From Fimbriosthenelais zetlandica (lineage: Eukaryota): 64,000 nt of DNA. Within the stretch, counting starts at the first letter, position 1. Each line of letters starts with the position of its first letter. Position numbers and translations under genes: made by a program. Of this stretch, positions 29,901-53,900 are shown piece by piece. Location: positions 39,618,001-39,682,000 of the forward strand of contig OZ365109.1 of assembly GCA_977030845.1 (NCBI GenBank), read 5' to 3'. The notes beneath the pieces were generated by a model. It saw nothing but the letters and a program-made list of their open reading frames with translations, did not search any database and had not been told where the DNA came from.

Positions 29901-32900
29901 ATTGAAGGCCAGCCATGTCTCTCAGTGTATTGAGAGGCATTTTACAAGAACCATTGCTGCCCTTCACAAAGAGCAGGCCATTTTGTACTGACAACATGTT
30001 TCCTATTCTGAAATTTAGGGCAATACCTACAGCCTAAGTAATTGCCATAGTGGATTTAGGGCAATACCTACAGCCTGAGTATTGGCACAGTGGATTTAGG
30101 GCAATACCTACAGCCTCATGCAGTATTGCCATAGTGGATTTAGGGCAATACATACAGCCTCAGTATTGCCATAGTGGATATAGGGTTTATGTATTTCTAA
30201 TGGTAACAATGCAATGTGTCGAGGGAGTATAAACAGCTGGTTAACTGGTAAACAGCTTTGTGCCTGCACCAGGAACAGTAGCTGAACAAAACCTAGACCA
30301 ACACAGTCCGTAGATACTCCCACTCCATCTGATGGTGCTGGTTCTCAGGGTGGTGATGGTGGTGGGGGGAGGGGGGGGGGGTGAGAGAGTTGGGGGTGGG
30401 AGAGAAGACGGGGAGGCGTGAGGGTGTGGAAAGGGAGTGGGCTCCAGATAAAGAATGATGTTGAAGCCTAGGGCAACAGTTACACTCCTAAAGTATTGTG
30501 ATCAAAGCACTATGATAACACATCAATGATAATATGAAATTTACTTGGATCAAATATATGACGTTAAAACGTAAGCTATTTTTTGCCTAAATTGCCTAAA
30601 TTGTACACTTTGTCACCATAAACAAAGAATTGAGACCATAAATTTGACACGTTATCAATAAACTTAAGTTCGGCTTGCCATAAATATACATTAAGGCTAT
30701 ACCACCGTTGCTGTGGTGATTTGTCATGCAACACAATAATCCATTTTTTTTAAATTGTGTCCATGAATCCTGTGGAGAGATGTCTCGGGAGAAGTTCAGA
30801 ACATTAAATGACTGCGGGACCTGAAAATATTTGCTGTGAAATTAAAGCAGACGAGACCGCAATGTGACACTGAAAACCGTAGAAACCGAAGCCTGTAAGG
30901 AGATTAGGTTTAATAGTGTGGGCGAGAAGGCAGTTGAGAAAGGACCACCATCTCTCTAGTCGCTCCTACCGCCATTTAATATGCCAAGTATTGCCATAGA
31001 AGCCAAGCTATAGACTACACCCTCCCTCTACCAGCTACCGCTTTGGATTTACTGTTATATATCCGCGCATTATTTCAGGCCTTTATATCTGTATTATGAC
31101 ACTATAACCAAATAGGTCTTGGATGCGCCCTTTAGGAGATATTTCAGCTGAGCATGTTGTGAAATCAATGGAGCTACATGTGGGTTGCAATAGGAGCAGC
31201 TCGACTGAGCAATACATTGAGCCGCTCAGGGATTCACGGCTGATATTAGATATGTAATCTAAGGCCTGGATAGTGTATCTACATTCCTATCTATTAGATG
31301 CAGGAATTGCACATCCCTGTTAGGGCACATTGAATATCTTTTGTTTCGTGGAACAACAGATTTATTGGGATACATTGGCTATTTATCAAGCAATTCCCAT
31401 GGCCATAAGTTATTTGTCTCTTGGAATAGATTCCCTTTTCATTGCTACTTATCACAAAAGGGACAAGAATGCCTTTATGTCTTATCAAAAGTTATCAGAA
31501 GATGGATCGGAAGTGTGTTTTTTTTCTCAGGAGAAAATCATTTTAAACCTTTTTTCTCCATATTTTCCGATTAGAAATACTCCAAAAATAGAGGGATATA
31601 CAAATGAGAACATAAAAATTTAATATTGGGCTAATTGTATTCTGCTTCTCCAACGACACCCAACATGTTTACATTTGTTATTAAGTAACCTTATGCGCAC
31701 AGCCTTCAAATCGGTATATATATATATAACTTAAGAATATATAAATTTATTTTTAAAATCTCCTCATGTATAGGAAAAGTAAAGCAATACCGAATCAGAT
31801 TTAAGGTCTGTTTAGAAGAAAGAAAACATCTATTGTAGATTGGATGTTTTGTATTGAGATCACGGTGAGAGCCTGACGCTCCTGGCTGATTGTGAATGAC
31901 TGTAGAGCCAGACCAGCCTCATGGTTAATCCCACTACACAGCTAATTAACTATACAATGAATAATTCCCGCCTTCTTCAGCCTTAATGACAGAAAAACGC
32001 CCGATATGAATGCTAAAACAAGAGCTCTGATTACACTCAAACTAAACGCTGGCCTCCACTGATGAGATTGTTTTGCCACACATGCGAATTTATGAATTTT
32101 ATTGTGACAAGGCAAGGAGGTTCTGGAATACCTCTACATATAAAGGGAAAGATCAGGCAGTTTTTATTTAGAAATATTCTCCAAAACCACCTCTTCCAAG
32201 AGCAACTGGAAGAATTTTCTTAACCATAATACACATTGAATAATACCACATTTCACATTCTGTTCACATACATTCCCAACTCTCCTGGTTTTGTACAAGA
32301 AAATCGCCAACGGCGAGGGTCGGAGAGGGTACAAGCAACATTTTTGAGAAAACAGTGCTTAGATAATGCAATAACAAGCAATTTTCCAAGCACTTTTGTC
32401 AAATAAAATGGTACCCTAACCCTAACTTGACCCTCGCCATTGGCGTAGTCCCTTGTACAATGTGAGGTATGTCCACATACCTTCCCAACTCTGTCTCATC
32501 GGTCGGTCATTTGTGTTGGTGTGAGTCAACTTTAAAGATAACGCAAGTTCCCTCCCATTATTACCACTGTTACGGCTCTATAAAAAGTCCACCATATGGG
32601 GAAAGTCTGTATAATTGAATTATAATTGTGGTGGATTCAAAGTGGGTATTGTTTACTGATTACAGTAGTCTTACAAAGAAAAGCTGTTTTTACTCGTCAT
32701 GTCTAATTATCTTCATAGAAAGACAATTAAATAAGTGCAATTAGAATCTGTTGTCTTAAAGAGACCTGTCTAGTAGTATTTTGCTCACATTAGTCTGAAT
32801 CACTTCAATGGATTTCAATGAAATAACTGCATTACATTGTCTGAAGTGAAATTCAAAGAATTATTGGAAAGTTAATTAAATTCTGATCCTAATGTGAGGC

Positions 32901-35900
32901 ATATATAAACTATACTCGTTTAAGACTACTCCATGCATTAAAGGTAATATAGGACAATTGTTAGTGATTCTTTAAATGATTTTAATTGATTTGTGATTAT
33001 TCTTTAAATTAATATGCTCTTTTGTCTCACTCTCTCCTTTCGTATGCCATTCTTGATAAAAATGATAATGAACCATACCATGCCATGCCAAGATATGCCA
33101 TCCCATTGATCGGGATGAAATATTTACAATCACCCTACTTCTTTTGAACCTACAAAATTTAGTGTCCCGAATTTGGTAAAATCTAAATTCTTTCCTGGGA
33201 AAGAATTTCTAAAGAGCTTTCTCGTGGTGCCTTTGGTAGCTATCTTCGTAATGGACGGAGCTGCAGTTTCCATGAACAGGAAAATGCCTGGATTATTTTT
33301 TTGCCATATTTACTGACAGCTTTGATTTCTTTGTGAAGAAACCAGGTGTTCTTTATGAAAAAGCCTGACCCTGACCCTCCGATCATTCCCTCAGCCTGTC
33401 AAAGTGCGAGAATCTTTTTAAAAAATGATTAAAAAATGATCTTGTTTGCTCTTAAATAACTTCCAAGACAAAGCGTCTTTAAGAAAGCAAGCTGCCAAGT
33501 GCAAGGATCCTTTCAGATGAATTAAAATGCTTTAATACAAGCTAAAAAAAACTATTTTGAAAAAGAGGGAAAAATTTGCTTCTTGAAGGAATGGGAAATG
33601 TGAAAACTTCCAAGGAGTCCTAGGATGTCATTACTGTCAAATGCTAATTGTAGGTTATGTTTTTTAGAAGACGGATATTGTAAAAATGTCCATTTGGCCA
33701 TTCCCTTATGGAAATATATATTTTCAACATTTACTCGCATCTGCAGTATATTTCAGAGTGCTAATAGATTACATAATTTTTACCGCATTTAGCTGTCATT
33801 TATACAAAAATCATTTACAGTGTAGGATTTCCTATCTCTATGTATTCCACGTCTCTTGGATTAAACAGTGGTCCCAACAGACGACTGCTCCAAGTCCAAC
33901 AGAAAAGAGAAAAACACTGGAAGGGAACCTACAACTCCACAGGACCCTCTCTCAAATGAACCTCCGTAATTTGCATATTGATAAGGAGTTCGTTCCTCAG
34001 GGAGAGGTGTGAATGATTTGGGAGTGATCACCAATAATAGACTACCTGTATTTGATGGGGACAGGTGAGAAAATTGACACCTGTAATAATGGACCTCTAT
34101 ATATGCACCTCACTGGGATTAAAATATGATACCTGATTACCAGGATTATCATGAATATTTATAAGGTAAGATTAATGCTGAGTAGCTTGTAACACTTTCG
34201 CTGCCAAAACAATTCCAAACTTTTGTGTTTTTCTTTTCTTTTTTTTTGATTTTGTGAGTACAAAAGCATATGATAAATAACAGAGACAACAAAGGAGTTT
34301 TATAGTAGGTAACATATGCGAGTACATCCCTCATTTACAAACTCTGAAATTGTGTTGGTGCTTCTAGCACAAGTTGTCCATCTGAATTTATAGACAATTT
34401 TATGATAATTATGTTCTGGTTTAACTTATATTTTTTATATTAACTTGAATGGAAGGTACAATTTCTGGGATAGTGGCGGTGAAATTCATACAGAATAGTG
34501 AAGGCTTTGCTCACTTATGTGTAATATCTGAAAATATGTCAGATAATCTCTATTGAAAGCTATTGATTGAGCTATTTGAAAGCGTAATACAATAGGCACA
34601 TGGCTTGGTAAGGCTAGTGGCAATGTTAGTAGGGCGCCAGACACGTAGATCAGAACTGGGCAGAAATTGTGTATTTGACACACTTTTCTAAGAGGGTCTG
34701 GTCCTAGTGTGTACACAGAAAAACCTATGTAAAGTTCCCCAGGTACCTCCTCTCCCCAAATATTTAGCCAATATCCAGTTTACAAACCAAAACTGTTATC
34801 ACTTCTCCCTGGATACTTATGTTGCGAAAACAAAACGGAGGTCTGACATAGGAAGTGGAGACAATTCTTACAGGATATTTTGATGGTTGGTTGGAATTAT
34901 TATCCTTTACTATGGATTATAGATTTTAAAAGAAGGAACTGCATTGGCAAAAAGTTGGTTTATTATGAGAATTTAGAATTTGCTTAGGAAATGGAAGAGG
35001 TTGTGAACACTCCCTGGGGATGGGAGTGTTCGGACACTAATAGTATATTTATCATTGGCTTTTCCCCTTGAGATTTCAGCTAGAACCTGTGTACAAATGA
35101 TAAAGACTTCCAATGTCCTTTAAAATCATCAGTGATGTATATATAATATTTCATGCGTAATAGCCTGGCTCCACTATAAACCACAAAATCGGCCAGCGAC
35201 TTGTCCTTTGACCTAAATTGTTAACCACAGTTATACATTATTTCCCTCATATTTTGCCATTTGTTTGAATTTGGCTTACCATAACTTTCAGAATGGCCAC
35301 AGAACATTTCTCATATTTATTGACCAATAGATTGATCCTATAATATATAACCCGTGACCCACGTACACCCAGCCACCCACCCCGACCCGACTCCACTCCC
35401 ATGGTCAGTCTCCTGCTATTATAACTTGTGGACAGCTGCAGTACTGTCAACACTCCGCTTTGAGAAGTCAAGAGTTTTTGAAGGTTTTTGAAGTTTTTGA
35501 GTGGTTGATATGGGGGATTTACTGGCTGGTCCCGCAGAGGAGGAGACAGAGTGGAGGTGTGCTCTCAGGTCTCTCTCCATGGACAATATTAAAAAGGTGG
35601 CTGTAAGTATTCTATACTATTGTCTACACGCTAAATCTTATATCAGAAATTGTCTTATGAGTTGAATGGCTTTAGTGCCAGTTCACTGATAGAAAACAAC
35701 CACAATTCTTACTGTCAAACTTGAGAAATCAGACCTTTATATACAGTTGGCAGCATCATAATTTATGCTTAGGCAACCTTGTGAAATTGCAACGTTAATT
35801 TGATTCCAAATAGCCCCAGATTTATTCCATAAAGTCCCGGCATCTACATCTATAATTTCATGACCGACTAATAACTATAAGTAATAAAATAAAATATTAT

Positions 35901-38900
35901 CCCTCTATTATCCCTCTAAAAATCTTTGAAAAATATTCATTGGAAATTTTTTTAATCTATTGCAACACTACTATGATTTGTCTAAAATCCAAGGTATTAG
36001 TCTCATATATGACGTATGTTGATGACTCAAGCCTCTTACATAACCAATATTGATATGATTTGCTCAACAACATGAGCAAAAGAGCAGAAATAATTGGTCT
36101 ATTGTGTAGACATACGGTCAAATGGTGGTCAAATGTTGAGCTAATGTACAGGGTTTTGTAAGCTTTTTTGTGATACATATTACCATTCTTCAGGTGGCAA
36201 AAGAGAAATTGCGATGCAAAATCGCATGATTGGATTCTGATAGCTATGCAAAATCAACGTGCATATCATTTTTTTTCAAACCAGAATATACCCTGCAGTT
36301 TAGGTATCATTGTTATACAATGGCCTGTATAGTGTATGGTATTATAAGTGTCAATGATTCAACGTTATGTTCTGGTCACACCTGGCAAGGTTATCATTCA
36401 CACATGGTGTCTATAACATTAATATAGGTAGAGCAGGAGGACGACAAGGAGAGAGAAATGTTTAGTATACAACCCACAGAGAAAAGGCGTCATAAAAGAT
36501 CGGTAACTGATTCAGATTCTCAAAGTGGTATGAGCTATGACAATAACTGGGCTGGGTTCTCCTTGATTAGGTCCTGCAGATTGAGTTCAGTCTCCTGCAG
36601 GTTGGGTCCAGTCGCCTGCAGTCTCCTGCAGCTTGGGTCCAGCCAGTTACAGATTGCCCCCAGTTCCTTTGAGACCTAGTCCTGGTGTAGTGTAATAACT
36701 TATAGTGATAAAATAATTTAAGTGCATTTTCTTGTTTCTGCTTTCTGTATTCAGTAACTACTAAGGCCATCAGATAACAAGTTGTGATATTTTTTTTTTT
36801 TTTTTTTTTTTTTTACAAACATTTTGATTTTTAGAAATACCATATAAAATTTAATATTATTTGCAAATAAAAATCAATTAAACATGGAAATACTTGTCAT
36901 AAAGCTCCTAATTCATAAAATATGTATTTTTCTGAAATAGGGGTTTTCTTCTGTGATTTGTTCCCACTTGTTTACAAGTTGTAACTCTGGACATTGATGT
37001 TCTGCCTGTGGCTGCAGCTTAACATCTGGGAATGTTGCTTCAGTGAATGCTGCATGAACTAGAGTCACCAGCTTTAATTAAGTTTGTTCCATGGTGGGAT
37101 TTTGGGTCGCCTGTCGAAAAGCAGTATAGTGACATATAAGGAAGCTTTATTGCTGTATACCTTTGTATTGCTTCGATTCATATAATATACTATATTCATA
37201 TGCTTCAAATTTGATTACGAGTCGTTTTGAAAACTGCCTTTTGCCTGCGATACATTATATACCAACAGTTTACAAATGAATTTTTGTTTTGCTTAGTAGT
37301 CAGGTTGATGAATGGAATATGAAATTGGAAGGAACTTACAGAAGGAAATAGACTATGAAAATATGATAAATTATCTGATGATAGTCCTATCCTTTTCTGC
37401 AGCAGTATTTTAGTCAATATTCATAGCGAATTTACATTGGAAAATTAGCATTAAGGTCGTATAATATATATAGCAAGCTTGCTACTAATATCTATGCAAA
37501 TGGCCTATCTGCTATAAATTGCATGACGGTAGCAGACTGACTAAGATAGCTCTAAGTGACATTAGCCTTAACTTAGTTTCAAATGTGGATAGAATGTCAT
37601 AACGGTTTTTAATCACAACAGTGTTTTGATAAACTTATTTATATATGAAATATATTCTTCAGGATATTTTTTCCATAAATGCTGTATTGTTTGATATTGT
37701 CTATCAGCTTTTATCAGTGCCTTCAATATCACGATAGATCAGTATTATAGATAGCAGTTAAGATGGTTTATCCTAGAAAATATCTACAATATAGCCAAAA
37801 TATGCATTCAAATTAATTCTATTTATCCAAATATTTGGAACTGTTTTTCAAATGAGCAAATTTACAAATGAATTTAGGCTGATTTTTAGGTATTTTGTCT
37901 ATCGCATCTAAGCTATCTTAACTATTATCCGAGTGTTCTATGTGATAGTGGAGGCTTTTTTCCATTATTGTCTCGTGTTATTATGCTGATATTGTAAGCA
38001 TCATATATACTCTCATATCAGGATGTCCACAGTTTAATTACTCTAATAAGTCACAATTTTCTCCATAACATTATTTTTCTTCCATTTTCATCAATTTCCC
38101 TCTATATTAATAACCTTATTTTCGTCCATCTTTGAAACTACATGTAGATGAACAAATTATTATATGAATTTGTTCTTGTAGAGTCATAGACCCTTTACAT
38201 TCTCAACATCTTGTTATTTCTTTCATTTTTCCATCCATGACTTTTGAGAGAATTCCTCAATCTAAATTGAGATATCAACTTTCCAAGCCCAAAAGTAACC
38301 TGTTGTAAATAGTTCAAATTTGCCCTGAATTATTTCTAACATTCGAGATATTGCATCTTGAGTGAATATTGAATTATACATGATTTAGTATTTGATGGTT
38401 TTATTTTGGTATTTGTTTGCAGTATTTCAAGAAAGCCAATAAGCTTGGAGATCAAGCTAAGAAATTGAAAACCCAAATATGGAGTTCTGTGGTTACGATT
38501 GTCCTGGTGGAGGGGAAGAGTCTGCTGCCCATGGACGACAATGGTTTCTCGGATCCTTATGTTAAGTTCCGGTTAGGAAACGAAAAATACAAGAGTAAGG
38601 TATGTGTCAGGATTCTCACTTTGGGGTATGTCAATACCAAGATTCTCACTTGGGTATGTACATGCCAATTCCAAGATTCTCACTTGGGTATGTACATGCC
38701 AATTCCAAGATTCTTACTTGGGTATGTGTGCCAATTCCAAGATTCTCACTTGGGAGTATGTCAACTCCAAGATTATCACTTGGATATTTACCTGCAAATT
38801 CTCACTTGGACATGTACACGTGTCAATTCAACGATTCTCACTTGGGTGTATGTATAAATTCCAAGATTATCACTTGGGTATATATATATGTGTAATCTCA

Positions 38901-41900
38901 GGTGGGTATGTGTGAATTCCAAGATTCTCACTTGGATATGTGTCAATATCAAGATTCTCACTTGAAAAGATCATGGTTGCCTTTTCAATGGAGAAAGGGC
39001 GTGCTACAAGCATTCATATACATTATGTTTCTGTGAATTTTTATTTTGTAAAGGGGAATGCATATACTGTATACTGAATGTGATCTGTGCTCATTTGTTG
39101 TGATGTACAACGTTCTTGTCAACATGGCTACCGTCACAACATAGCCACAGTTTTGTTCCTCTGTGTTGGAAACTCCTCCTAATTCGAGTCCAATTTTTTT
39201 TGTCATCTGAAATTGTAAATAATAGAAATGTATCCTTCACAACGTATAGTTGCAAGGAATTATGAAAAACATGAGACTCAATGTAGGCCTGTTTAAAGTG
39301 GATATTGAGTCCTATTTGGGAAGTAAACAATCCTTAGCATAATTTTTGAGAAAAAAACTATATTCAGGCAGTGGTTGATATCCACCAAGGTTATTTGCAG
39401 ATGTTGTAAAGTGTTATTCCTCTTAAATTGCTTTTGTTTTACATTGATGTCTATTGACAATGTTTTTTCCCGTATTATAAGCATGTTTATACTAAGTTCT
39501 CGCATATTTTGTATATTATCAGTCAATTTCAGAATGCCATATGTTCATTATGTATACATGTAGCTATCATTTTATGGTGTACCATGGGTTGTTGCTTAAT
39601 CCTGCAACCACTCAAAAGTCCTGATTTTCAACTGAACAGCTTGCAGAATTGGAGAATACATTTGGAATGCATTATAATACTCACCAGATTTTACAAGCTG
39701 TTCGTTTGAAAAACAGGTATCTTGGGGTGCTGGAGGTATTATACGATGCCCTCAATATCTTGTGGACCATCGATATTGTTTCTTTGCTTTTAAAAGTAAT
39801 AATTATACATGCATGTTTGTCATATATTTTTGACTGGATCACTTTTTACAGGCCAAGAAATATAATCAGAGAATATAATGACAATTGCCTAGGAACATTT
39901 TAATACATTAGCCTATTTATTGATAAATTTTAAGATGATTTAAATTTTCCATCTGCTTTGGCATTGCTTTTTGCTGACAATTGCCTTTTGCTTTTTGCGG
40001 GCCTCTTTGCCTATATATCTGGAATTTTTACCGCTGTAGGAATCTCTTTATAATACATTCAGTCTTAATGGCCAATAAGAAAGTAATTTTTCACAACCTT
40101 TTTGTCTAATTTTCTGTCCTCAGGGTTCCCAGCCATCCAGGGAATTTAGGGTTGAAATATGTTTTTTATTTTATTTTTTCCTGTAAGAGAGAAAACTCTT
40201 TATTTTGGAAGTCCACATTTTTAAAACAAGCAGTTTTTAAGCTAGCAGTTGTGCTAGCTCCCGCAACTGCCGTATCTGCATCTAGGGAACCCTGGAGGTG
40301 CTGGGGAGCCTGTAGAATGTATGTTCTGTGAATGAGTACTGATGGACACTCTCTGTGGTGTCTATCTTCAGGTTGTCCGTCAACGTCGCCGTGCCACCAG
40401 ATCACGTCATCATGTAGGCTCCCACCAACCATATGCCTCCTCCTCCACTACCACCTCTTCTTATTCTTCCATCTACTCTTCTTCCTCCTACTCTCCTTCA
40501 CCAGAGAGTGTTGATAATGTGACTAACTCCTTAACCATTTAATATGTGATCATATTTAGATGTTTCCAGGCTCTCTCCGCTATCTTCCTGCCCATTATTC
40601 AGTGCTGGCCCCTACTGTTAAAGTGTTGAACTATAAATGTATATAATATCAAGGATGCAAGTGATCACCAACCATCAATATACATTGAAGTATCAATATA
40701 ATTTTTAGTATTCCTAGACATTTTGGATTTTCCTCCATTCTACACATTTCATTTTGTTTCATTTATTGGTCCATTATATGCTCAAAAATGTAAGAAATTA
40801 TCGGAATGTCAACATTAATATTAAGATTTTATGGTTGTTTTTTAATTGCCTCACTTGCATTCTTGACAGAAGAGTGTGTCAAAACTAGGGCTGGTTGCAC
40901 AAAGCAGAATCACCAAACAGTTATTTTATTCAAAAGAAATTCTAGGGCTCTTTCATGAGAAAAGATATGGAATGCATTCTATTGCTATTTGGTAATTTCC
41001 TTATCTGATTTCCCAACATCATTATAGTCACTATAAAATGTGAATGGGCCATCTTATTTTGGAACATTTCAAATATATACATTTAAATTTTATACATCTG
41101 TTAGTGGAAACAAATTCTGAACAAGTAGGCCTATGCCCATGAATTACTGAACGCTCTTGGCCAAATTTATTTTTAAAAAATCGACAATAGCCTATGGAAT
41201 TATGATGGAGGCTTTATGCAAATTGAACAGCCTAATAACCTCTGAGTGACTCTGCTGTGGGGTAACCTGTCCATGCACCAGTAGGTCAAACTAATGTGTT
41301 CTTCGTTTAGGCAGTTGGTAACACATGCTGTTGGTGTTGTGGCGCTCCTGCGAGGGAAAGAAACCAATGCTAATAGGCCATGGAATATATATGGTGCCAT
41401 TTCCTCCCAAATATGGAGTGTTCATCCAGTGTCCATGTACAGTGTAATCTCACTAATTCGACCCTCCACTGTGAAATATTAATACGGACAGATCCATCTT
41501 TGGGACCAAATTATTGTCATATTGTGGGAAACACCACGGTGGTGTAGTGGTTAGAGTCTCTGCCCCGTGTGTGGAAGGTCGCAGGTTCAAACCGTGGCCG
41601 GCTCAAACCAAAGACTTAAATATTGGTACTAGCGGCTCCCTCTGTTGGCAGTTTGAACCGTGACGACAGTGCTATGATTGGTTGGCCTGGTGTCAGGAAA
41701 ATGTGATTGGATGAGGTATCATGTCATGTCATGTGTCAGACGAGATACCTCAGTGTGGCAGCAATATAAAAGAGCCTAGGTCTCACTGTCATCAGTAGGC
41801 ATTGTCATGATATAACTGCTGGGCTAATTCTAACCACAAATTTCTTTTAGCAAAAAGTGCTAATGACACCAAATTTCTTTTAACAATTTGCAGTTGGCGT

Positions 41901-44900
41901 TAGCAGATGTTAATTTGAAGGAAACATTGCTAGTTGGATTTTTCCTTCAACTCTGATATTTGTGTGATTTTGTGGTTAGGTGTGATTTTGATTTCGCAAA
42001 ATTAGCGAATAACAGTCATTTTCTTTTAGCAAAGTAGCATTTTTATTCGCAAATTGCGACAGTGCGATCGGGTAGAGCCAGCCCAGAACTGACAAATTGT
42101 TGAAAGTGACATTACGAAATCATGGAATAACAATGGTCGCTTTAGTGGTGTTCTAAACATTTGGTTTTGACCTTTTGATGGTCGCATAATGAGGCAGTCG
42201 CTTTAGTGAGGTTGCTGTTGACTGTACTTCTAAATGGGTGTGTTACTTTGTATTATGTCTTTGTTTGTAAGGTATGATGCCCTCAATATTCAGTCCTGGT
42301 TGCAATGTCAGCTATTCGCTTCATGCACCGTAGCTTCTTTGCAATTATTCCGTATTTGCACCAAGAATAATTATGACCCTTTTCACCTCAGATATTATAG
42401 GTTGACACTTAGCCTGTAGGCCTACATATAATATTATATGAGAATTAAATTTACACAGACTATGTAGGTTAAAATAGGTTACATAACATGTTATCTAGAT
42501 CCCTGAACAGGTATTGATAAAGACCCTCCCTTTGCGTGCTTGTCCGTGTGTTTATGTTTGTCTTTAACATGGCTAATCACTAAAGAAAATTATTGGGATA
42601 TAGTTTCTTTTCCATAAGAAAAATAAGGTTTGGGTATCGATAATAATAATAAGACTAAACACTTGTTTTGCTTGAGATTTATTCACATGAGTTCACACTA
42701 ACTAAAATTGTTTAAATATTGCCGTAAGACTCTTTCGTTTCTCCTTCTAATGACTTTCTGTTTGTAAAACATTCTAAACAGAAAATTATTTAATCCTGAA
42801 ACAAAAATAATATTTTTGCATCATATCGTACATAGTACATATCCAGCAGCAAAAGTAATGTCTGTCAGTCATTTTCCTGTCATTATTTTATTAATTTTCA
42901 GTACATTATTTCTTTAACAAACACATTTCAATTACCAGAATAATTTAAACATTTCTCTATTTCCTTTGTACTTATACTATTAAACTTCAACATTCCAACC
43001 AACAGATTTAAACCCTGATTGCATGATTAGTCTAATGTCAGTGAATGTTATTTTTTCAGTATAAAGCCAAGACCCTGAACCCCCGGTGGCTGGAACAGTT
43101 CGATCTTCATATGTTTGATGATCAGACGAGTCACCTTGAGATCTCAGTATGGGACCACGATCACGCCGGTAAAGACGACATCATGGGCAGGTCAGTTCTT
43201 ATAGTTTTCTTCTCTTTTTCCCTTGACCACCACGGTGGTGAATTGGTAATGCCTAGTTTACACTAAGAAATCTTATTATTTTTTTTATATTGGGTTGATT
43301 TTTACATCCAAACATGTACATCGAAACTAATTGTGATATTCTTGTCAATTATACCCATTTTAGGTCTTATATAGCTCTTACTTTTCCTACCAATTTAGAC
43401 CACATCCTTCTATAATAACTCAGATGGCTACGTTTCCTATTTCTAATATTAAATAATTTGTAAAATAATAATCTCATAACAATACTACTGCGTGTTCACC
43501 TCACCAAATACTGACCTGGCCCAGACTGAATTATCTCTTTGATTAACAATTTTTGTCAGACACAACATGCCTACGTTTGTAATATTACGCACTTTATTTT
43601 ATTTGTATCCTCATACTTTTTCAAGCCGCTAGCAGTCCTGTTAGATTTTAATCGGTTCTGTCACATTCCACCTGTTCTAACAAATCCCAAGAAATTCATT
43701 TTCAAACGTGGCAATCGTGGCAATTTTTTTGCCAGGCAAAAAAATTGTCGCGGTCATCCAGGCGTTCAAGGTATATCACATTACCCCTATCAGTCCCATC
43801 ACGTCGCCTAAGGTTCTCTTACCTTTATTACGTTTAACCCGGTTAAAGCAAACATGCGTAACATGGTCAACGTGGACAAGTGTAAATGTATCATGAGAAG
43901 TGTTTGTCCTGCATCCTTTTTATACCTGATCTTTTAAACGCGCTCCAAACGTGCTCAAAACTTGGTCTGAGCCTGTTTTTCCCCCACGTTCATCTGTTGT
44001 ACATAAGCCTTGTTATATCTTATTATGACTTGAGAAACTTGGGGGAACTTTAACAAAACTTGATAAATGTGAGGGAACTGGTAGCATCTTGCAGGAACTT
44101 GACAAAACATTTTGGCATCCTGACCTAACCTTTATGGTTCTTGAGTCACCTGGACTCAGGAACCCGATTCTTACAGTTGATCTGATCCGATCACCCTCAG
44201 AGATCCCAACACAACCTAATCAAACGGTAAAAGAATTCTGAATTCACAAATGACGAAGGTTTCCAGGTTCCAGTACGTTTCAAACAAACGTGGAGAACGT
44301 GGCCAACGTGACCAAGTGTAAACTAGGCATTAGAGTGCCTCCCCCGTGTCTGGAAGGCCGCCGGCTCAAACCGCGGCGGGTCATACCAAAGACATGAGAC
44401 TACACTGTCCATAAGGATCGTGTATTTAAACGAAGAAACCTCGGTAATTCTTCCTTCATCCATCGTAAGTTTAAATCCTTGTAAAATGGCATATTCCGTA
44501 TAGATTATGATCGTATGAATAGAGGCTTCGTAAGGCGCCGCTCAGCGTAAGGCGCCGCGCATCGTAAGACGCCGCGCATCGTAAGGTGGGACTTCGTAAG
44601 TTAGTGACTTCGTAAGTTAGGGGATTAAGGACGCACTACTAGCGCTCAGGCGGCCGCTATAAATACTATTAGCTCCTGCGCTTCTATGGTATATATAGGC
44701 AGTAATATGGAATATTAATTTATTGATAATTATGGGTGTTTTGATTTGATCCCCCTTCACTTTCAAATAGATTTTGTTTATATAATGTACAATATTTCAG
44801 GATGAGAATATGGAAGGGTATGAGAAAGTCAACAAAATGTATTTAGTCAATTATATTTATTGAAGTTGTCCTCTGCACAAAACAATTGGATGAATATAAT

Positions 44901-47900
44901 TTCAATTGCTCTTTCACATGCTAAACTACCCGATAGGCCTATACATATATTGCAAACAGCATATCTGAGACACCAGTAACAAAATGCAAACCACATGGTT
45001 GAGTTTTAATTTGGTGTTAACTCTTTGTATTGAAATGTCATTTAAAAGGAAAAACCATTGGGTAACAATAAGTTTAAATTCCTCTGAAGTCGACCTTACA
45101 AATCTGACAAATGAATCCATAATTATACATTCATTCTCTCGATAAGCTACCCAATATTTAATCCGAGTTCAAACACCGAGTCTGAGAGGGGAGGAAAGTC
45201 CGCGCCACTCTGTCTCACCTACCCCCATCCCTCCCCCTGTTCACAGTCCCCCAGTCCAGGTCGGCCATGTGTGAACTTGAACAAAGCTATTGTACTGTGA
45301 TTATGTAAGCTTAGTAGACAATGGTTCAATGGCTTGTTACAATTGTTATAACTACATGTATACATGTGCTCACTCAGGAGTTACTTTTAAAAATGACCAG
45401 TAATTTGACAGAGATATATCAAGTAAACCTTTGTCCAAGTTAAATTAAACCGGACCAATAAAGGTAAATAATTATGGTTATAATTATAAGTATGTAACAT
45501 CACGCATCCATTAAGTAAAACTTCCTCCAATCTATATGGACACAGATCTAATGAACTTAAATATAGAAAATAGATAGATGTAGATAGATGGTTTGTCACA
45601 GAGGCGAAGAGAAGGCAACTGCACATGAATAAATGTTGAGGCAGAAGATCTGAAAAAGAAAATCAATACGGAAAGTTAATTTATTAGTAAACGGTTATCT
45701 GTTACTCTATATTTTTTAGAGATGGTAACTTTATATTAACAAAACTTGCCAAATCTTAATACAAGCTTAAAAGCCCTCTAATACTATACGGGATAAAAGC
45801 TTAGGGAAATGAGTACACACGCCCTCCCGATAGCCAGACACTTGCTGCCTGACCCTTAAAATAAATACATTATACCTACTTTCATCTGAATTCTCCACTT
45901 TGTCCTCGCACTGTTTATATCCCTCTCGAGTTTCTTCATCTCCGAGAATTCCTTATAAGATAAAAAAATAAGTGACATATTATTAATATAAGACAAGACC
46001 ATTGTACAACCATAGGTGTGAAATGCATCCATAACAGCTTCCAAGTTAAGCTGAACTCCCTCCACATGTATACATTCTTTTTTTACAAATCTAAACTTCT
46101 AATCAAAGAACTTATGAATGTACCGGTGAAAGCACATATCTGATATTATTAAATTGAGGTAGTTACTTACATGTTTGCCATATGCTTAGATCCAACATGT
46201 GCCTAAAATTATCCAAATTTTACACAGTATTCAAGGTTTGGTGAATACATGAAGCCTATCTCCTCGCTTGAGAACTTGCTTGCTTGTCTGTGGTCACTCG
46301 ACTGGTGGTGGGGCAGGGATGTGGAGGAGGAAGTCACTCCTCGATGGTCCTATCTTGTATTACGTAACTACATCGTAAGATGAGGGGGGCGTATAATGTA
46401 TTACCTCGTAAAGTGGGGAATCTAATCTCATAATTACACGAGGGAACGTAGAATGCGGCAACCAATCTTGTAATTATACAAGATTGGCGGATTAGGTAGT
46501 TTTTGCGTTAAAAAAACGAGGTTTCATTGTGGTCAAACGGAAAGCAAGGACAGTGTAGTGGCTCCCTCGCTTCGCACTCAGCAAAATGAGGACAGTACTT
46601 GGACTGGTCAACCTGGTGTCAGTATAATGTGATTGGGTGAGTTATCATGTCAGGTGCCTCGGACATGATACCTCAGTGAGGCAGCACTATAAACGAGCAC
46701 AGGGCTCACTGTCACAAGTAGGCACCGTCATGATATAACTGAAAAATTGTTGAAAGTTTTCAGTCATAATCTTTTTTTTTCATCAACGTCTTTTTTTCTT
46801 TTCTTTTTCCATTATTTCTTCTACATCTTTTCCTCTTTGTCATTAATTTTGTTACTTCCTATTTTGTTTTCCGTCGGCTCCATTGTAAGTCTTCCTCCAT
46901 TCTCCATCTTGTCTCCATTACTCTTCAGTAATGAGAAATGAATTAAACGTAAAATGCCACTGGCTGAGACTGATAGATTCTGATTTTTCTTCTCTCATTG
47001 TCTTCCTCTCCTCATGAGCAGAGATCTCACATATTAAACAGAGCTACATCCAGTAGGCCAGTATAACTATAATATAGTGTTATGAATTGAATTAAGATTG
47101 AGATCACCTTTGACAAATTTCCTGATCCAATCTCGACTTACTGTACCATATGCCAAGGTACCTTGCAGCGTAGATTTTCACTCAGTTTCCTATAATAACA
47201 ACAATTGTGATTGGCAGGATATGAAAAGTTTTGCAAAGCAACAATAGACCTACAACAGTAGACTTGACGAGCATACAGGGTGTTGTTGTACAAGTAAATC
47301 GTCAATGCCGAGGGAAGCCTCGGAGAGCGATTGTGTTGGACAAGCAATATTTTTGGAAAAAAAAACAGTGGGAGAGGATATAATGTCAGGGTTCCCAGCA
47401 ACTCGGGAAATCAGGGAAAACCTGGAAATGAATTTCGCTTTTTCCAGACAGGGAATTTGAGAAAAACTGGAAAAATCAAGGAAAACTCAGGGAATTTAAA
47501 CACTATAACTTAAGTCAGGAGGATAAGTCGGAGGTCGACGCGTAAAACCCCATCCCCGCCACTGACGTTCAGAGTGCTTTATATGACTAAAATATCTCCT
47601 GTGATTTAAGAGCTTACTCAGGGAAAAAGCAGGGAAAACTCTGAAAGTATTTTAATGTTTTACAGGGCAACAATAGACCTGACGAGTTTAGGACGGGAGA
47701 GGACACACACGCTCGATACACAGCTTGAAGACGGTGCGGGTATTATACGTATACTACTCACTATTAGTGGTACGAGTGGTGGCGAGTCAATCTCTGATCT
47801 CGTCAACTACACGCCCAACCCACGTGAACGAGAACAAATCGTCTGTAAACATGTAAGCATCAACTTGTTTCATTTTTCATTTAGTTAAAGTTTCTATTGG

Positions 47901-50900
47901 CAGTTATTTAAAAACCATTTAGTGAGTCTTCCCTATTTATGGCAAATAGTCCATTTGCATTGACCCAGAACTTTGCTAGCCAGGTAACAGTTTGGCAACG
48001 ACACCCAAGCACCGTATTGTGCTACTAGTACAAGCCAGGGTGGAAGGTCAACTTATCCGCAATTAAAAACCATTTTTAGTAAAAGCAACCCGTGGTTTTT
48101 GAAATCATATTATGGATAAGAATTGACACATGGAAGTAAATTCGGATTATTTTATTTTGTTTCAGGGCCTTATGAACTCATTTAAGAACATCAGAGACAT
48201 TGGCTGGCTCCAAGTCAAAGGTAAAATAATTGCATTGTTTTTAATCAAATTAGAATTAAGTTAATTAAATGTAGCCTAAATGTAGTAGGTATGGTATTAA
48301 GCCACAGAAAAAAAAACATCCAAACATGTGAATTAATTGTCAACTTTGTGATTGATTTTATTTATTTTTTCCAGTGATAAAGGCTCAGGGTTTAGCTGCA
48401 GCAGATTTAGGTGGAAAGAGTGACCCTTTCTGTGTCATAGAACTCGTCAATGACCGCCTACAAACTCAAACAGAGTACAAGACGCTCTTCCCTGAGTGGG
48501 GCAAAGTATTTACACTGTAAGTGCAAATAACTTTCTCTATTTTATTTTTTATTTTTTTTTACGAATTTTCTCGAGGGATTACACCATGGGTCAGGCAGTA
48601 TTGTTCTTGAATGTGGGAGGGCTCTAGTGCTGTTAAAAGGATGAGTCATTTTTTCTTACTGAATGTGGTACGATACATACAGCACAATCCTAACTTTTGT
48701 CCAATAGCCTGAACCCATTGATCTACGATCTCCCTATGATCTTTTTGAACTTGCTCAAAATAAGAAGGTAGGGTGTTCTGATCCCTGAAGAACATGAACA
48801 TGATCGTAGGTTCATTCAACATACTTCTAAATTTTTGGATCGTAATTGAATCGTAAAGCAGATTGTAGGGAAATCGTAGCTCAGTGAGTTCAGCCTATAA
48901 TACTCTGATTAATTATCTATTCATATGATTAAATAGTTTAGACTCTCTTTCAATTCACTTTCTTTCCTAAACTTTTAAACCTAGCCTAATAGAAACCTAG
49001 TAGAAATATTCCATGGTATTCCATGTCGGACAGAGCCATGTCACCCACATTGTGAGGTGGCACACCAGATCTCAAATCTAGAACTAATAATTTTTGCAAG
49101 GATTATGTAAGTAAGCTCTGTAGAACACCCCTAATAATTTTTATGATGGACTTTTTCTCTTTAGAAATGTGAAGGACATTCACTCAACATTAGAAGTAAC
49201 AGTTTATGATGAAGACCGGGACAAAAAATCTGAGTTTCTGGGTAAAGTGGCAATACCTCTACTGCGGGTGAGTGTGTTTTATTATTTTATAAAATGCTAA
49301 TGAAACAACTGACAAAAGTGAATCTTTTTACCAGGTTCTGGGACAAGAAAGATTTGTTCCTGATTCATTTGTTGATCAATATTAATCATAATAAAAGTTG
49401 TACATAAATGCCCTTTTATTTTAAAACTGGAGCATGGAACTATATTCCGAGGCTCAGCCAATCAGATGGCACGAAATGAGGTCAAGCAATGTTATGTAGG
49501 TCACTAGGCCATGAATGATCTTAATGTCCTATGTATACAATGTATCACGTTTTTGGGTCCCTAACTTATCTGAATCGAGACAAATTTAAAGATATTTAAT
49601 AAGAAATTACGACCTTGGATGTGAAATTTGAAACAATCTGTCAATTTTTCAGCCATTTAATATTCCCTATTACATTATAATCACTACCTTGTATTTATTC
49701 CCACTGGCTTGTACATCTTTGCTTTCCTTATGAAAAGACTTGCCGTATTTCATATTATCGATCACTTTTAATTTAATGCTCACGCTCAAATTTCACTTGT
49801 ATTTGAATATGGAGTAAAATTGAGAAATAAATTTTGATTTAATAATCAAATTATTCATATACACAAAATAAAAGCACCATATGAAAGAATATGAAATCAC
49901 AAAAAAGTATCGTCACAATATTTCGATATAACACATGTATTTTATTTTGATATTTTGAATGCTAATGAACAACATGCATGTAATAACGATGTCTATTTCA
50001 CAGTCTTTAACTAGGCCCACACCAAACCGACAGACAATTTTCGGCCCAATCACCCAATGATATTGATCTAGCAGATTGTCGGATCTTGACAATTTGGCCT
50101 TACTTCTATTTTTCTTCAAATTTTACCATCTGCCGGTTTTAAAACCAAATAATGCAACAGTAAAAAACTGTAAATTGTACAATGTCTGTCAGCCTGGTAT
50201 GTGGACACCTTAAAGTGGTGGATCCAGAGAAAATACATTTTTTCTAAAACCTAATCTGAGTGGATGGGAAAGGGGGTCCGTTGATCGCCATTTAGAAATC
50301 ATTTTCCTTGGGCCAATCTGTAGCCCATTCTCTTGGCACTCAGCGGTAAGTGGACAGTGGCCAACCTGGTGACTGGGTGAGGTATCATGTCATGTGCCTG
50401 CGACATGATACCTCAGTGAGACAGCACTATAAAAGAGCATATGGCTCACTATCACAATCAGGGACCATCATGAGACCAGAAATTGATGAAAGCTAAAGTT
50501 AAAACACATTAAAACCTAATCAACCAATCTGGATCCACCCCTAACTTAATATCATTTTTCTCTCCTCAGCCCTGCTTATGCTAATATTTGTAATCACTCT
50601 ACTGGTTGTTTCCACTCTCAAGTTACATGGAGTGTACGGCAACCCTCACTTTCAGATCCGCTGCGGAGAAAGGCGCTGGTATGCCCTCAAAGACAAGAAA
50701 CTGACAGGCAGGGCTAAAGGTGCCATCCAGTTGGAAGTAGATTTCATCTACAACCATGTAGGTGACCTGTATACACAAGGGTCAAAATTCATGTACAAGT
50801 GGCTTAGGTTGAAGACCATGAAATATTTTGTTTCTAGTAAACCATCTCCAATATTTTAAAGCCTTGAATACATTGAATGAGATTTTTGTCGGAGCAGATG

Positions 50901-53900
50901 ACGAAAAATCCACTTAAGTGTGTTCAAGGCCTTGCTTTTCTCTCCAGGCCAACTTTGTTTTCTGTTAGCTATATTGATGTTGGACTTTCAATAAGACTGA
51001 AATGCATTAACATTTGGGAATTTTTCTAAAACAATTTTTAAAAAGAATATTTTATTGGAAACAGTAATGTTTTATGGTCTAGCAGGCGTTATCTCCTCAA
51101 TGATATATCAGTCTAGAGCATGTCATTCTTAAGTTGGTGAACCTAGATAGTTTTCAAAATTAAACAAAGCCAATAACTGAAAAGCATGAATGAAAGAATC
51201 ATTGAGGCATTTTAAAAAGGGTTTCTTTGTTTTCTTTCTGCAGATTTTGCTGCTGATTATTAAGGCTTAAGTTGAATGTACATAGACTGTGGGTTTGAGG
51301 AGATAATGATATGTACTCAATATTGTATTGTTGGATGTTGAATTGTGAAGATGAATGTTATCAGCGAGATGTCACACTGATTCATCCTATTGCAGCATTC
51401 TTATACATTTCTTGCTCTAAAATCTGATTGCTTAAAACTCGGTTCTTACATGTATTGGTATCTATAAAATTGCATTTTACTTTTTTGCAATGCTGCTGCT
51501 CCTTGAAATATAAAAATTGGGTCATATACAAATTTGCAAGTGGAAAATACTCTCACTGGACCCATCATCAACACATGGGGGTTTGCGTTATCCCCTCACC
51601 TTTTCTTGCAAATTTGCTATATTCTTGTTTACAGTGTGGCATCTCCTGACATGTTGCACCCTCCGTCTGGCCCTGTGGCATCACTGTGGCTGCCTCCACC
51701 TCTCTCACATTGTACATTCACCCACTGGTCCTGGTCTAGTCTAATCTATGTCACATCCTAGTGCTTAACTAACAGTAGCCTATTGCACCCCTTACTGTTT
51801 ACAGATCAGAAATGGCGAAAGGCGATGGTATCAATTAAAAGATAAGAAAGTCATGGGGCGAGCCAAGGGGGCTGTCCTATTGGACATGGACTTCGTGTTT
51901 AACCATGTGAGCGCTCATTCAAAAGAACGGAGAATTTATTTAAAATTTCATGTTTTCTAAGAGTTCCTTCACAGTAGAGAGTACCATGAGAGTTCTACTT
52001 ATTTTTTAACATCATGCTGTGATTTTTGGATCCCGGTTAAATTTCGGTTTTCTGGATTTTATAATTATTAAATATATTGGAAATTTCTAATTATAATGTA
52101 CTGCTTTTCACTACAATCCCCCATTTCTCCTCGTAGGATACTTCTACGGTATTTTCTAAGGGATTTTTTTTCCGAGAATTTTTTGTGTGGGGAATTTTAG
52201 ATTATTCCGGTGTCTACTCTCGGCTTGCCTTTGTCTTGAGCTTTTGTGTAATATTTGTGATTATTAACATTTTGGCAATGCAACTGTTTCACTCTTCTTC
52301 CTATTCATCTCTGCCTTTAATAATAATTATTTTAATGATTGAATAATACTAATTTCTACTTCTAAATCCTAACCAACTAGCCCTATAGATTAAACACTTT
52401 GAATCCTAACTACTTGCAAGTCTTCTTTTACATTTTTTGCCAGAATGATTTTACCGGTACTATCCCTTAAATCCTATTATTCCTTTCATCTAAAGTAATT
52501 TTCTTAAAATATAAGAAAATATGTTTGAAGTGCTTTTATAACCATAAGATAACACTTACTGAATTTAAATGTAGATTCTTGTTACAGCCAATTAGACATT
52601 TAGCTGATCATTTTCTTACTTGACAGATAAAAGCTGCTGTTAGAACTTTTAATCCACGAGAAGAAAAATATATGCAACCAGAACCAAAGTTCAAAATCTC
52701 TGTAAGTATATCCTCTAAAAGGAACCCCCATAGTTTAGCTACATCGAGGAGATAACTATCTTTCGAAATTCAATTAATTTGGCTAAACTTGTTAGTATAA
52801 TATTCTTGCCAAAACATGGCAATACATGGCACATTCCAGTAGGCATAGCTCTGGAACTATTCAGTGTATACAAATATAATTTCAAGTCTGAATTAAATGG
52901 AAATTGAGTAAAAAAAAATTAAACAAAATACATGATCGAGATTGACCGTGATGATTTGATTCTGGTGATTTATATTAGTATGATGTGGTGATTTGGTATG
53001 ATTTTGGTATTTTGATCTTCAGGTCATGAAGAGGAACATTGACAGAGTAAGCAAACTGGTGGAGGCGGCTGTTGAAGCTAGTAAATTCATACAGAGCTGC
53101 TTTGACTGGGAATCCAAAATACGGAGTTCTGCCGCCTTCGCTGTGAGTACTTTCCTTATTAAGCCTGGAACACATTAATGCGATTCTCTCTCCGTCTCCA
53201 TCCGATAGCTGTCAGAAACTATATAATTTCTCTTCACACCAAATGCCTGCAGGTTGGGTCCAGTCTCCTGCAGGTTGGGTCCAGTCTCCAGCAGGTTGGG
53301 TCCAGTCTCCTGCAGGTTGGGTCCAGCCTCCTGCAGGTTGGGTCCAGTCTACTGCAGTTTGGTTCCAGCCTCCTGCAGGTTGGGTCCAGTCTACTGCAGT
53401 TTGGTTCCAGCCTCCTGCAGGTTGACCTCTGCCCTACCATTTGGGTCCAGTGTCCTTAGTTAAAGCCTCACTTAATCTAAAGTAAGGAAGCATACATTAT
53501 AAATAATGAAATGTTGTTTTATTTTGCTCCAGGTGTTCATGATCATAGTGTGGAACTTCGAGCTGTACATGTTGCCTATCACGCTACTAATCGTCTTCGC
53601 CAAGAATTTATTAGTCGTCCATATAGCAGGCAACTTGATGAAAGAGGACGATGTGAGTCATACTTTACATCTATATTTCTACAGCTCAGTGGGTCCTATC
53701 TCCTTTAGTGGAACTATTCTGTATCAATTAAAGCAAAAAGTAAAATAACTTGCAGGATTCCCAGGAAGTCTAGCATATAGGTCATGTAAATTGTTTCTCA
53801 GATGGGGAATGGGAATGGTCTGAAACTTGAAATAGTACTTGATGATTCTTTGGCTCAGGCTCAGTAAACTGTCAACATAGACTGGACTGATTCTTTATAT

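What the first reader, a model, noticed from the sequence alone, without database searches (positions are those of the whole stretch)
35510..35602. Internal first exon that would make a C2A-less MCTP isoform
A strong start context (gatATGG), an in-frame upstream stop, 31 sense codons and a perfect phase-0 GTAAGT donor match the exon at 38423. A TATA-like tattataa lies at about 35418. The product would keep only C2B, C2C and the membrane region, so promoter choice would change the number of Ca2+-sensing domains.
Basis: partly seen in the sequence, partly recalled or inferred. Interest (0 to 1): 0.7.

Follow-up and report, generated by a model that had tools for sequence, protein, structure and literature searches.

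The report
Unproven extra start exon in MCTP
Inside a long intron of a worm calcium-sensor gene (MCTP) lies a 93-base stretch that looks like a start exon for a shorter protein, but related worms lack it and no RNA data could be reached, so it is an untested candidate.

Summary
The sequence is as described. ATG at 35510 follows an in-frame TGA (35498-35500). 31 sense codons run to 35602, GTAAGT starts at 35603, and the frame continues into the first C2B exon (38423-38599).

The stretch lies in the 13.8-kb intron between the last C2A exon (24510-24633) and that C2B exon. Mollusc orthologues join these two exons directly.

It is more exon-like than average intron:
- Such an ORF-plus-donor arises in 1-7% of simulated introns, and about 0.1-0.3 times per intron of this size in real DNA of this genome.
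- Codon use fits the gene's real exons in the proposed frame only.
- It is single-copy.

Against it:
- Two complete and two partial orthologous introns from related genomes hold no counterpart.
- None of the ~490 fetched proteins, mostly MCTPs, carries the peptide.
- Half the codon score comes from four GAG codons.
- Similar codon-like islands occur on both strands of the intron.
- The TATA-like motif is non-specific.
- No sequencing run was listed, so transcription and the 35602>38423 junction are untested.

My odds: unused pseudo-exon 0.47, real species-specific alternative first exon 0.35, cassette or poison exon 0.10. If real, it is an ordinary internal-promoter isoform.

The scan logged this same stretch once more (s1-198388, a repeat read) and nothing like it on other DNA.

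The parts
24510..24633 (+). Last C2A exon of the MCTP gene (..[11 protein letters not shown]), ending on a codon boundary. This is the canonical splice partner of the exon at 38423.
   Evidence: P0015 and P0014 align here and then continue directly into 38423. The donor is CAG|gtaaga.
24634..38422 (+). 13.8-kb intron between C2A and C2B that contains the candidate.
   Evidence: One search shows the orthologue proteins skip it. The orthologous introns are 4.7 kb in L004 and 6.7 kb in L006.
35340..35400 (+). C-rich tract with CCACCC-like motifs, upstream of the candidate. It could be read as promoter boxes, but it looks like low-complexity DNA.
   Evidence: One search gives the sequence. One search gives GC 0.47-0.58 against about 0.3-0.4 around it. 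A G-rich tract of similar kind lies at 30329-30468.
35417..35424 (+). TATA-like tattataa, 86-93 nt upstream of the ATG.
   Evidence: It is not specific: the intron holds 46 TATAA and 32 TATAWAW.
35498..35500 (+). In-frame TGA that closes the frame upstream of the ATG.
35510..35602 (+). Candidate coding first exon: ATG plus 30 further sense codons.
   Evidence: Codon log-odds are 11.3 bits in frame and lower in the other five frames. It is single-copy in the genome. It has no Pfam match.
35603..35608 (+). GTAAGT donor in phase 0.
   Evidence: The same CT|GTAAGT or CT|GTGAGT style occurs at real exons of this gene, at 48517, 52704 and 53145.
38423..38599 (+). First C2B exon ([25 protein letters not shown]), with a phase-0 acceptor after cag.
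   Evidence: Pfam C2, E 1.5e-06; 81-89% identical exon-level ORFs in related genomes.

Best explanation
The stretch 35510-35602 is most likely an exon-like but unused piece of the 13.8-kb C2A-C2B intron of an MCTP gene (a pseudo-exon).

On this reading the canonical transcript splices 24633 directly to 38423 and removes the stretch with the intron. The ATG, the open frame and the GTAAGT donor arose without selection in a slightly GC-richer, single-copy patch.

Shown: the gene map, the direct C2A-to-C2B join in orthologues, and the absence of any counterpart in related genomes.

Inferred: that the stretch is not transcribed as an exon.
For: - Mollusc orthologues (P0015 Patella, P0014 Babylonia) pass directly from ..K[DE]Q to the FF/YF-K/R exon.
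- The complete orthologous introns of L004 (4.7 kb) and L006 (6.7 kb) hold no match to the peptide. Nor do 2.7 kb upstream of the C2B exon in L007 or 10 kb downstream of the last C2A exon in Paralvinella L002.
- In L004-L007 the best Smith-Waterman score is no better than with shuffled queries. At DNA level only the flanking C2B exon aligns.
- None of the ~490 fetched proteins, mostly MCTPs, carries a similar peptide.
- ORF-plus-donor combinations of this kind occur about 0.1-0.3 times per 13.8 kb in real DNA of this genome.
- Half of the codon score comes from four GAG codons.
- Codon-like islands of 11-17 bits occur about twice per strand in this same intron, including on the antisense strand.
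- TATA-like motifs are abundant.
Against: - The full combination is rare in simulation: 1% of simulated introns with the ATG context.
- It is the only candidate of its kind in this intron.
- Codon use fits the gene's real exons in the proposed frame only: 0.36 bits per codon, against a leave-one-out exon mean of 0.21 and off-frame means of -0.29 and -0.41.
- It is matched or exceeded by only 2.3% of GC-matched stop-free intronic windows. None of 26 comparable ORFs in 400 kb of genome sample reaches it per codon.
- The codon-like island begins at the closed frame and ends at the donor.
- The stretch is unique, not a repeat.
- The related genomes are distant (about 71% nucleotide identity in the neighbouring exon), so a species-specific exon would not show in them.
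Confidence: 0.47

Rival explanations
1. This is the first reader's reading: a real, species-specific alternative first coding exon.

Transcription starts within or upstream of about 35440-35510, possibly through an upstream non-coding exon that enters at the tttttgag| acceptor at 35501. Translation starts at 35510, and 35602 is spliced to 38423.

The product is a roughly 560-600-residue MCTP with a new 31-residue N-terminus followed by C2B, C2C and the two-helix membrane anchor, but without the N-terminal region and C2A.
For: - All sequence requirements are met.
- The combination is rare in simulation.
- Codon use fits in frame only.
- The donor has the gene's own style.
- The patch is unique and GC-richer than its surroundings.
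- In this species the C2B first exon has no ATG before PMDDNG, so a separate ATG exon would be needed to make an intact C2B.
- C2A-less gene models exist in Octopus, Branchiostoma and Haliotis, starting at or inside the equivalent exon.
- C. elegans mctp-1 is said to use two promoters.
- Engineered MCTP1/2 lacking C2A still raise ER-plasma-membrane contacts (PMC13537348), so such a protein could be active.
Against: - No RNA evidence of any kind could be reached.
- Related genomes have no counterpart.
- There is no canonical initiator, and the TATA-like motif is non-specific.
- The codon score is dominated by a GAG run.
- The short models in other animals may be split or truncated gene models rather than promoter isoforms.
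Confidence: 0.35
2. An internal alternative exon rather than a first exon, in one of two forms.

(a) A 63-nt phase-0/0 cassette (35540-35602, acceptor ..cccgcagag|GAG) that inserts [21 protein letters not shown] into the C2A-C2B linker.

(b) A 101-nt exon entered at tttttgag|TGG (35502). This shifts the frame and runs into a stop inside the 38423 exon, so it would be a poison exon that lowers MCTP output.
For: - Both acceptors exist, and the frame arithmetic is worked out.
- The C2A-C2B linker is variable, with long insertions in other animals (Anneissia and Cloeon isoforms).
- The same intron holds other exon-like pieces: the 21-nt candidate at 27219-27239 and a 75-nt one at 36428-36502.
Against: - The acceptor at 35540 has a poor pyrimidine tract.
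- The better-looking acceptor, cccgcag| at 35537, is out of phase.
- The codon-like signal already starts at the ATG, upstream of 35540 (0.50 bits per codon over 35510-35539).
- The frame used by the 101-nt version scores only 0.085 bits per codon.
- No counterpart appears in any fetched MCTP linker.
Confidence: 0.1
3. An exon of a separate transcript nested in the intron, either a small gene or a non-coding RNA. Its donor would join to something other than 38423, for example the exon-like piece at 36428-36502.
For: A second unique, codon-like, phase-0/0 piece lies 826 nt downstream.
Against: - No Pfam or Rfam match.
- No similar peptide anywhere else in the genome.
- The acceptor and donor of the second piece are weak.
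Confidence: 0.05

Closest known systems
Animal MCTP genes (multiple C2 domain and transmembrane region proteins), with C. elegans mctp-1 reported to use two alternative promoters
   Same: - The host gene is an MCTP. Exons with Pfam C2 matches for C2A, C2B and C2C and a C-terminal membrane region align at 55-75% identity to mollusc MCTP1-like proteins.
- A preprint states that two C. elegans isoforms are predicted from two alternative promoters (10.1101/2020.01.13.904789).
   Different: - Nothing I read says that any natural MCTP isoform starts between C2A and C2B.
- The candidate peptide has no counterpart in any fetched MCTP.
- From my own memory only, unchecked here: vertebrate MCTP1 long and short forms differ upstream of C2A and both keep C2A.
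Internal-promoter isoforms of other multi-C2 proteins that drop an N-terminal C2 domain (UNC-13 long and short forms)
   Same: The idea is the same: promoter choice removes the N-terminal C2A domain while the rest of the protein is kept. The C. elegans unc-13 gene encodes long and short isoforms with different release kinetics, and the N-termini of the major UNC-13/Munc13 isoforms carry a C2A domain (abstracts of PMC3743133 and PMC3821175, listed).
   Different: - Those isoforms are shown by cDNA and genetics. This one is a sequence prediction only.
- UNC-13 C2A does not bind calcium, whereas MCTP C2A is thought to.
C2A-less MCTP gene models in public annotation (Octopus vulgaris CAI9722261.1, 552 aa; Branchiostoma XP_066275026-29, 557-565 aa; Haliotis rubra XP_046571191/199)
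   Same: They begin at or inside the exon equivalent to 38423-38599 and keep C2B, C2C and the membrane region.
   Different: - They start with an ATG inside or 3 residues before that exon (MQSFYRR.., MKAQIW.., MDDNGF..), not with a separate upstream coding exon.
- Several are probably split or truncated models.
Engineered MCTP1/2 lacking C2A
   Same: The domain content matches the proposed isoform. In U2OS cells MCTP1 delta-C2A (450-999) and MCTP2 delta-C2A (341-878) still increased ER-plasma-membrane contact sites (PMC13537348).
   Different: These are laboratory constructs of human proteins, not natural isoforms.

Membership tests
MCTP gene (host gene) | Three C2 domains in series | tested here: met
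   Pfam C2 matches at the exons 19427-19681 (E 8.6e-19), 38423-38599, 43045-43200 and 48356-48517. They are colinear with the C2A, C2B and C2C of P0015 and P0014.
MCTP gene (host gene) | C-terminal two-helix membrane region (Pfam PF08372 in the orthologues) | tested here: met
   Exons at 53011-53652 and 60689-61740 align to the C-terminal region of P0015 and P0014, which carry PF08372.
Alternative first coding exon (internal promoter isoform) | ATG in a usable context, frame closed upstream, and open to a consensus donor whose phase matches the next exon | tested here: met
   It is the only such candidate in this intron.
Alternative first coding exon (internal promoter isoform) | Coding-like codon use in the proposed frame | tested here: inconclusive
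   - 11.3 bits in frame, with the other five frames lower.
- Only 2.3% of GC-matched intronic windows do as well.
- But half the score comes from four GAG codons, and similar islands lie on both strands of the intron.
- The model was trained on only 726 codons of this one gene.
Alternative first coding exon (internal promoter isoform) | Transcription start upstream, shown by CAGE, 5' RACE or read pile-up | not testable with these tools
   No run was listed for 35300-38700 or for 47600-53700, so read laying could not be used.
Alternative first coding exon (internal promoter isoform) | Spliced junction 35602>38423 in RNA | not testable with these tools
   No runs were listed. An exact search for the 24-nt junction in JGI metagenome and metatranscriptome contigs found nothing, which says little.
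Alternative first coding exon (internal promoter isoform) | Conservation of the exon in related genomes | tested here: not met
   No counterpart in L004, L005, L006, L007 or L002. This is weak as a test, because those genomes share only about 71% nucleotide identity even in the neighbouring exon.
Alternative first coding exon (internal promoter isoform) | Core promoter motifs (TATA box, initiator) at the right spacing | tested here: inconclusive
   tattataa lies at 35417-35424 but such motifs are abundant. By eye I saw no initiator consensus 25-35 nt downstream. No eukaryotic promoter tool was available.
Cassette exon of the C2A-C2B linker | Acceptor with a pyrimidine tract, length a multiple of three, phase 0 at both ends | tested here: inconclusive
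   Only 35540-35602 (63 nt) fits the phase, and its acceptor context ggctggtcccgcagag| is poor in pyrimidines.

The most novel reading that the evidence does not exclude
The stretch is a real, recently evolved internal start exon. The worm would then make a two-C2 MCTP (C2B, C2C and membrane anchor, with a new 31-residue N-terminus) from a promoter inside the C2A-C2B intron. Promoter choice would set how many calcium- and lipid-binding C2 domains this ER tether carries. It would be a case of a new first exon arising in an expanded intron: 13.8 kb here against 4.7-6.7 kb in relatives.
Probability: 0.35. Interest if true: 0.45.

Novelty: not a real feature. Interest (0 to 1): 0.25.

Why it matters
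If the exon is used, this MCTP would exist in a three-C2 and a two-C2 form chosen by promoter. That would be a simple natural handle on what C2A adds to an ER-resident calcium sensor and membrane tether. Human constructs without C2A still tether membranes (PMC13537348), so a distinct but active short form is plausible.

Internal-promoter isoforms that drop an N-terminal C2 domain are well known for other proteins, so even a positive result would be an ordinary addition.

If it is not used, which is my leaning, the case is a calibration point. A perfect-looking ATG, frame and GTAAGT with a good codon score can sit in an intron about 0.1-0.3 times per 14 kb in this genome.

Tried and rejected
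**RNA evidence**
- The look-up of sequencing runs on 35300-38700 (kind rna) and on the exon-dense 47600-53700 (kind any): none was listed. Read laying was therefore never usable.
- Metagenome contigs scanned with the 54-aa ORF and with the exact 24-nt junction: nothing.

**What else the stretch might be**
- Repeat or transposon origin: rejected. The 461-bp stretch and the peptide are single-copy in the 447-Mb genome. The only repeat seen nearby is at about 36164-36300.
- Intron-hosted small RNA: no Rfam match at E <= 1 in 33500-39000.
- Known protein domain: none in Pfam.
- N-myristoylation of MG..: rejected by eye. Asp at position 3 breaks the usual motif, as I recall the PROSITE pattern.

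**Orthologues and relatives**
- A closer relative: none found. The best exon-level hits were 81-89% identical in a very conserved exon, and several of their contigs had no DNA on offer.
- Full-length annelid proteins: only a Capitella model (649 aa) and a Paralvinella fragment surfaced.
- An analogous start exon in relatives' introns: L004 has none at all, and L006 has three weak, unrelated ones.

**Limits reached**

Full report
**Observation**

- gat ATG G starts at 35510.
- An in-frame TGA lies at 35498-35500.
- 31 sense codons ([31 protein letters not shown]) run to 35602.
- GTAAGT lies at 35603-35608.
- The downstream exon begins after cag at 38423 on a codon boundary and ends at 38599. 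A 35602>38423 junction would therefore read ..KKVA|YFKK.. in frame.
- The TATA-like tattataa is at 35417-35424.

**Gene map**

The + strand of the window carries an MCTP gene.
- Pfam C2 matches fall on the exons at 19.4 kb (C2A), 38.4 and 43.0 kb (C2B) and 48.4 kb (C2C).
- A search of 1.84 billion representatives with the C2A exon gave full-length MCTPs. Laid on the window by tblastn, they mark the exons from 16.7 kb to 61.7 kb.
- The last C2A exon is 24510-24633 (..[11 protein letters not shown]). It ends on a codon boundary.
- In P0015 (Patella, 917 aa) and P0014 (Babylonia) the sequence passes directly from ..K[DE]Q to FFRK.., which is the exon at 38423.
- The candidate therefore lies inside a 13.8-kb intron (24634-38422) and is not part of the canonical protein.

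**Could it be an internal exon?**

The frame is closed at 35498.
- The only in-phase cassette is 35540-35602 (63 nt). Its acceptor, ..ggtcccgcagag|, has a poor pyrimidine tract.
- A T-rich acceptor, tttttgag|TGG at 35502, would give a 101-nt exon. That shifts the frame and meets a stop inside the next exon, so it would be a poison exon (worked out).
- Neither fits as well as a first-exon reading. The codon-like signal already starts at the ATG.

**Chance**

- In 3000 third-order Markov copies of the intron, an ATG-ORF of at least 31 codons ending in phase on GTAAGT occurred in 6.6%. With purine at -3 and G at +4 it occurred in 1.0%. With looser cut-offs the figures were 29% and 4.6%.
- Real DNA is less kind. 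In 200 kb sampled along the same chromosome (400 kb of strand), 8 such ORFs end on GTAAGT, 3 of them with that ATG context. That is about 0.28 and 0.10 per 13.8 kb. At least one, in L009, looks like a true exon of another gene.
- In the window, the candidate is the only one of its kind in this intron.

**Codon use**

I built a codon log-odds model from 726 codons of this gene's mapped exons against its introns.
- The candidate scores 11.3 bits (0.36 per codon) in the proposed frame. The other five frames are lower.
- Real exons, scored leave-one-out, average 0.21 in frame and -0.29 and -0.41 off frame.
- Only 0.7% of stop-free intronic 31-codon windows do as well, and 2.3% of GC-matched ones.
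- None of the 26 comparable ORFs in the genome sample reaches 0.36 per codon.

Three cautions apply.
- Four GAG codons give half the score. Without them it is 0.21 per codon.
- The model reflects one gene's amino-acid make-up.
- Islands of 11-17 bits occur about twice per strand in this very intron, including the antisense strand and low-complexity G-rich DNA.

**Other intrinsic points**

- The stretch and its peptide are single-copy in the 447-Mb genome.
- It has no Rfam match.
- It sits in a 250-bp GC-richer patch, 0.47-0.58 against about 0.3-0.4.
- The upstream half of that patch is a CCACCC-type low-complexity tract.
- The donor GCT|GTAAGT has the same style as real donors of this gene: ACACT|GTAAGT, TCTCT|GTAAGT and TCGCT|GTGAGT.

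**Comparison with relatives**

Exon-level ORFs 81-89% identical to the C2B first exon led to contigs of related genomes.
- L004 and L006 hold the whole orthologous intron (4.7 and 6.7 kb).
- L007 holds 2.7 kb upstream of the C2B exon.
- L002 (Paralvinella) holds 10 kb downstream of the last C2A exon.
- In L004-L007 only the C2B exon aligns at DNA level, at about 71% identity.
- The candidate peptide finds nothing in any of the five loci. In L004-L007 the best Smith-Waterman scores are no better than with shuffled queries.
- L004 has no ATG-ORF-donor of this kind at all.
- None of the ~490 fetched proteins, mostly MCTPs, holds a similar peptide.
- These genomes are too distant to exclude a species-specific exon. 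They do exclude a conserved one.

**RNA**

- Metagenome scans for the ORF and for the exact junction were blank.

**Known context**

- A preprint says two C. elegans mctp-1 isoforms are predicted from two promoters.
- Engineered human MCTP1/2 without C2A still raise ER-plasma-membrane contacts (PMC13537348).
- Public annotation holds C2A-less models in Octopus, Branchiostoma and Haliotis. They start at or inside the equivalent exon, and some may be truncated models.
- In this species that exon has no ATG before PMDDNG, so an intact C2B would need an upstream ATG exon.

**Verdict**

The evidence still does not reach what is needed to call it an exon.

My odds:
- unused pseudo-exon, 0.47;
- real species-specific alternative first exon, 0.35;
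- internal cassette or poison exon, 0.10;
- part of another transcript, 0.05.

One RT-PCR across 35602>38423 would settle it.

Noticed in passing
window 36428-36502: A second exon-like piece lies in the same intron. It is 75 nt and in phase 0 at both ends ([25 protein letters not shown]), between atatag| and |gtaact. Its codon log-odds are 9.3 bits. The 36400-36560 stretch around it is single-copy, and it has no counterpart in relatives or in fetched MCTPs. Both splice sites look weak.
   Followed up: partly
window 24634-38422, versus L004 5254-9985 and L006 2100-8815: The C2A-C2B intron is 13.8 kb here, against 4.7 kb and 6.7 kb in two related genomes. Nothing in the introns aligns.
   Followed up: partly
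window 36164-36300: A repeat of about 135 bp has many copies in the genome: 699 first-look candidates, and all 39 non-self scored matches fall on this element at 80-90% identity. It lies just upstream of a short-period PAGWVQ-type repeat at about 36560-36650.
   Followed up: no
window 30329-30468: A G-rich low-complexity tract gives the highest codon-like score in the intron. This is a warning that the codon test is fooled by composition.
   Followed up: no
window 50644-50760 and 51799-51915: Two similar exons both align to the end of C2C in the orthologues (..[12 protein letters not shown].. and ..[12 protein letters not shown]..). This is the twin-exon pair already followed up in this scan (s1-198368).
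   Followed up: no
It is absent from P0015 and P0014.
   Followed up: no
L004 9986-10162 and L005 4557-4733: Two contigs of one ENA sample carry the same C2B exon ORF and identical tblastn matches at the neighbouring C2B and C2C exons. They are either haplotigs or a recent duplication.
   Followed up: no
L009 3181-3360 (G000:C1:4003181-4003360): In the random genome sample, one ATG-ORF ending on GTAAGT reads like the N-terminal part of a ligand-gated ion-channel subunit (..GRPV..VDFGLGLIQMDLDERNKILTTSMW..). It is probably a real exon.
   Followed up: no
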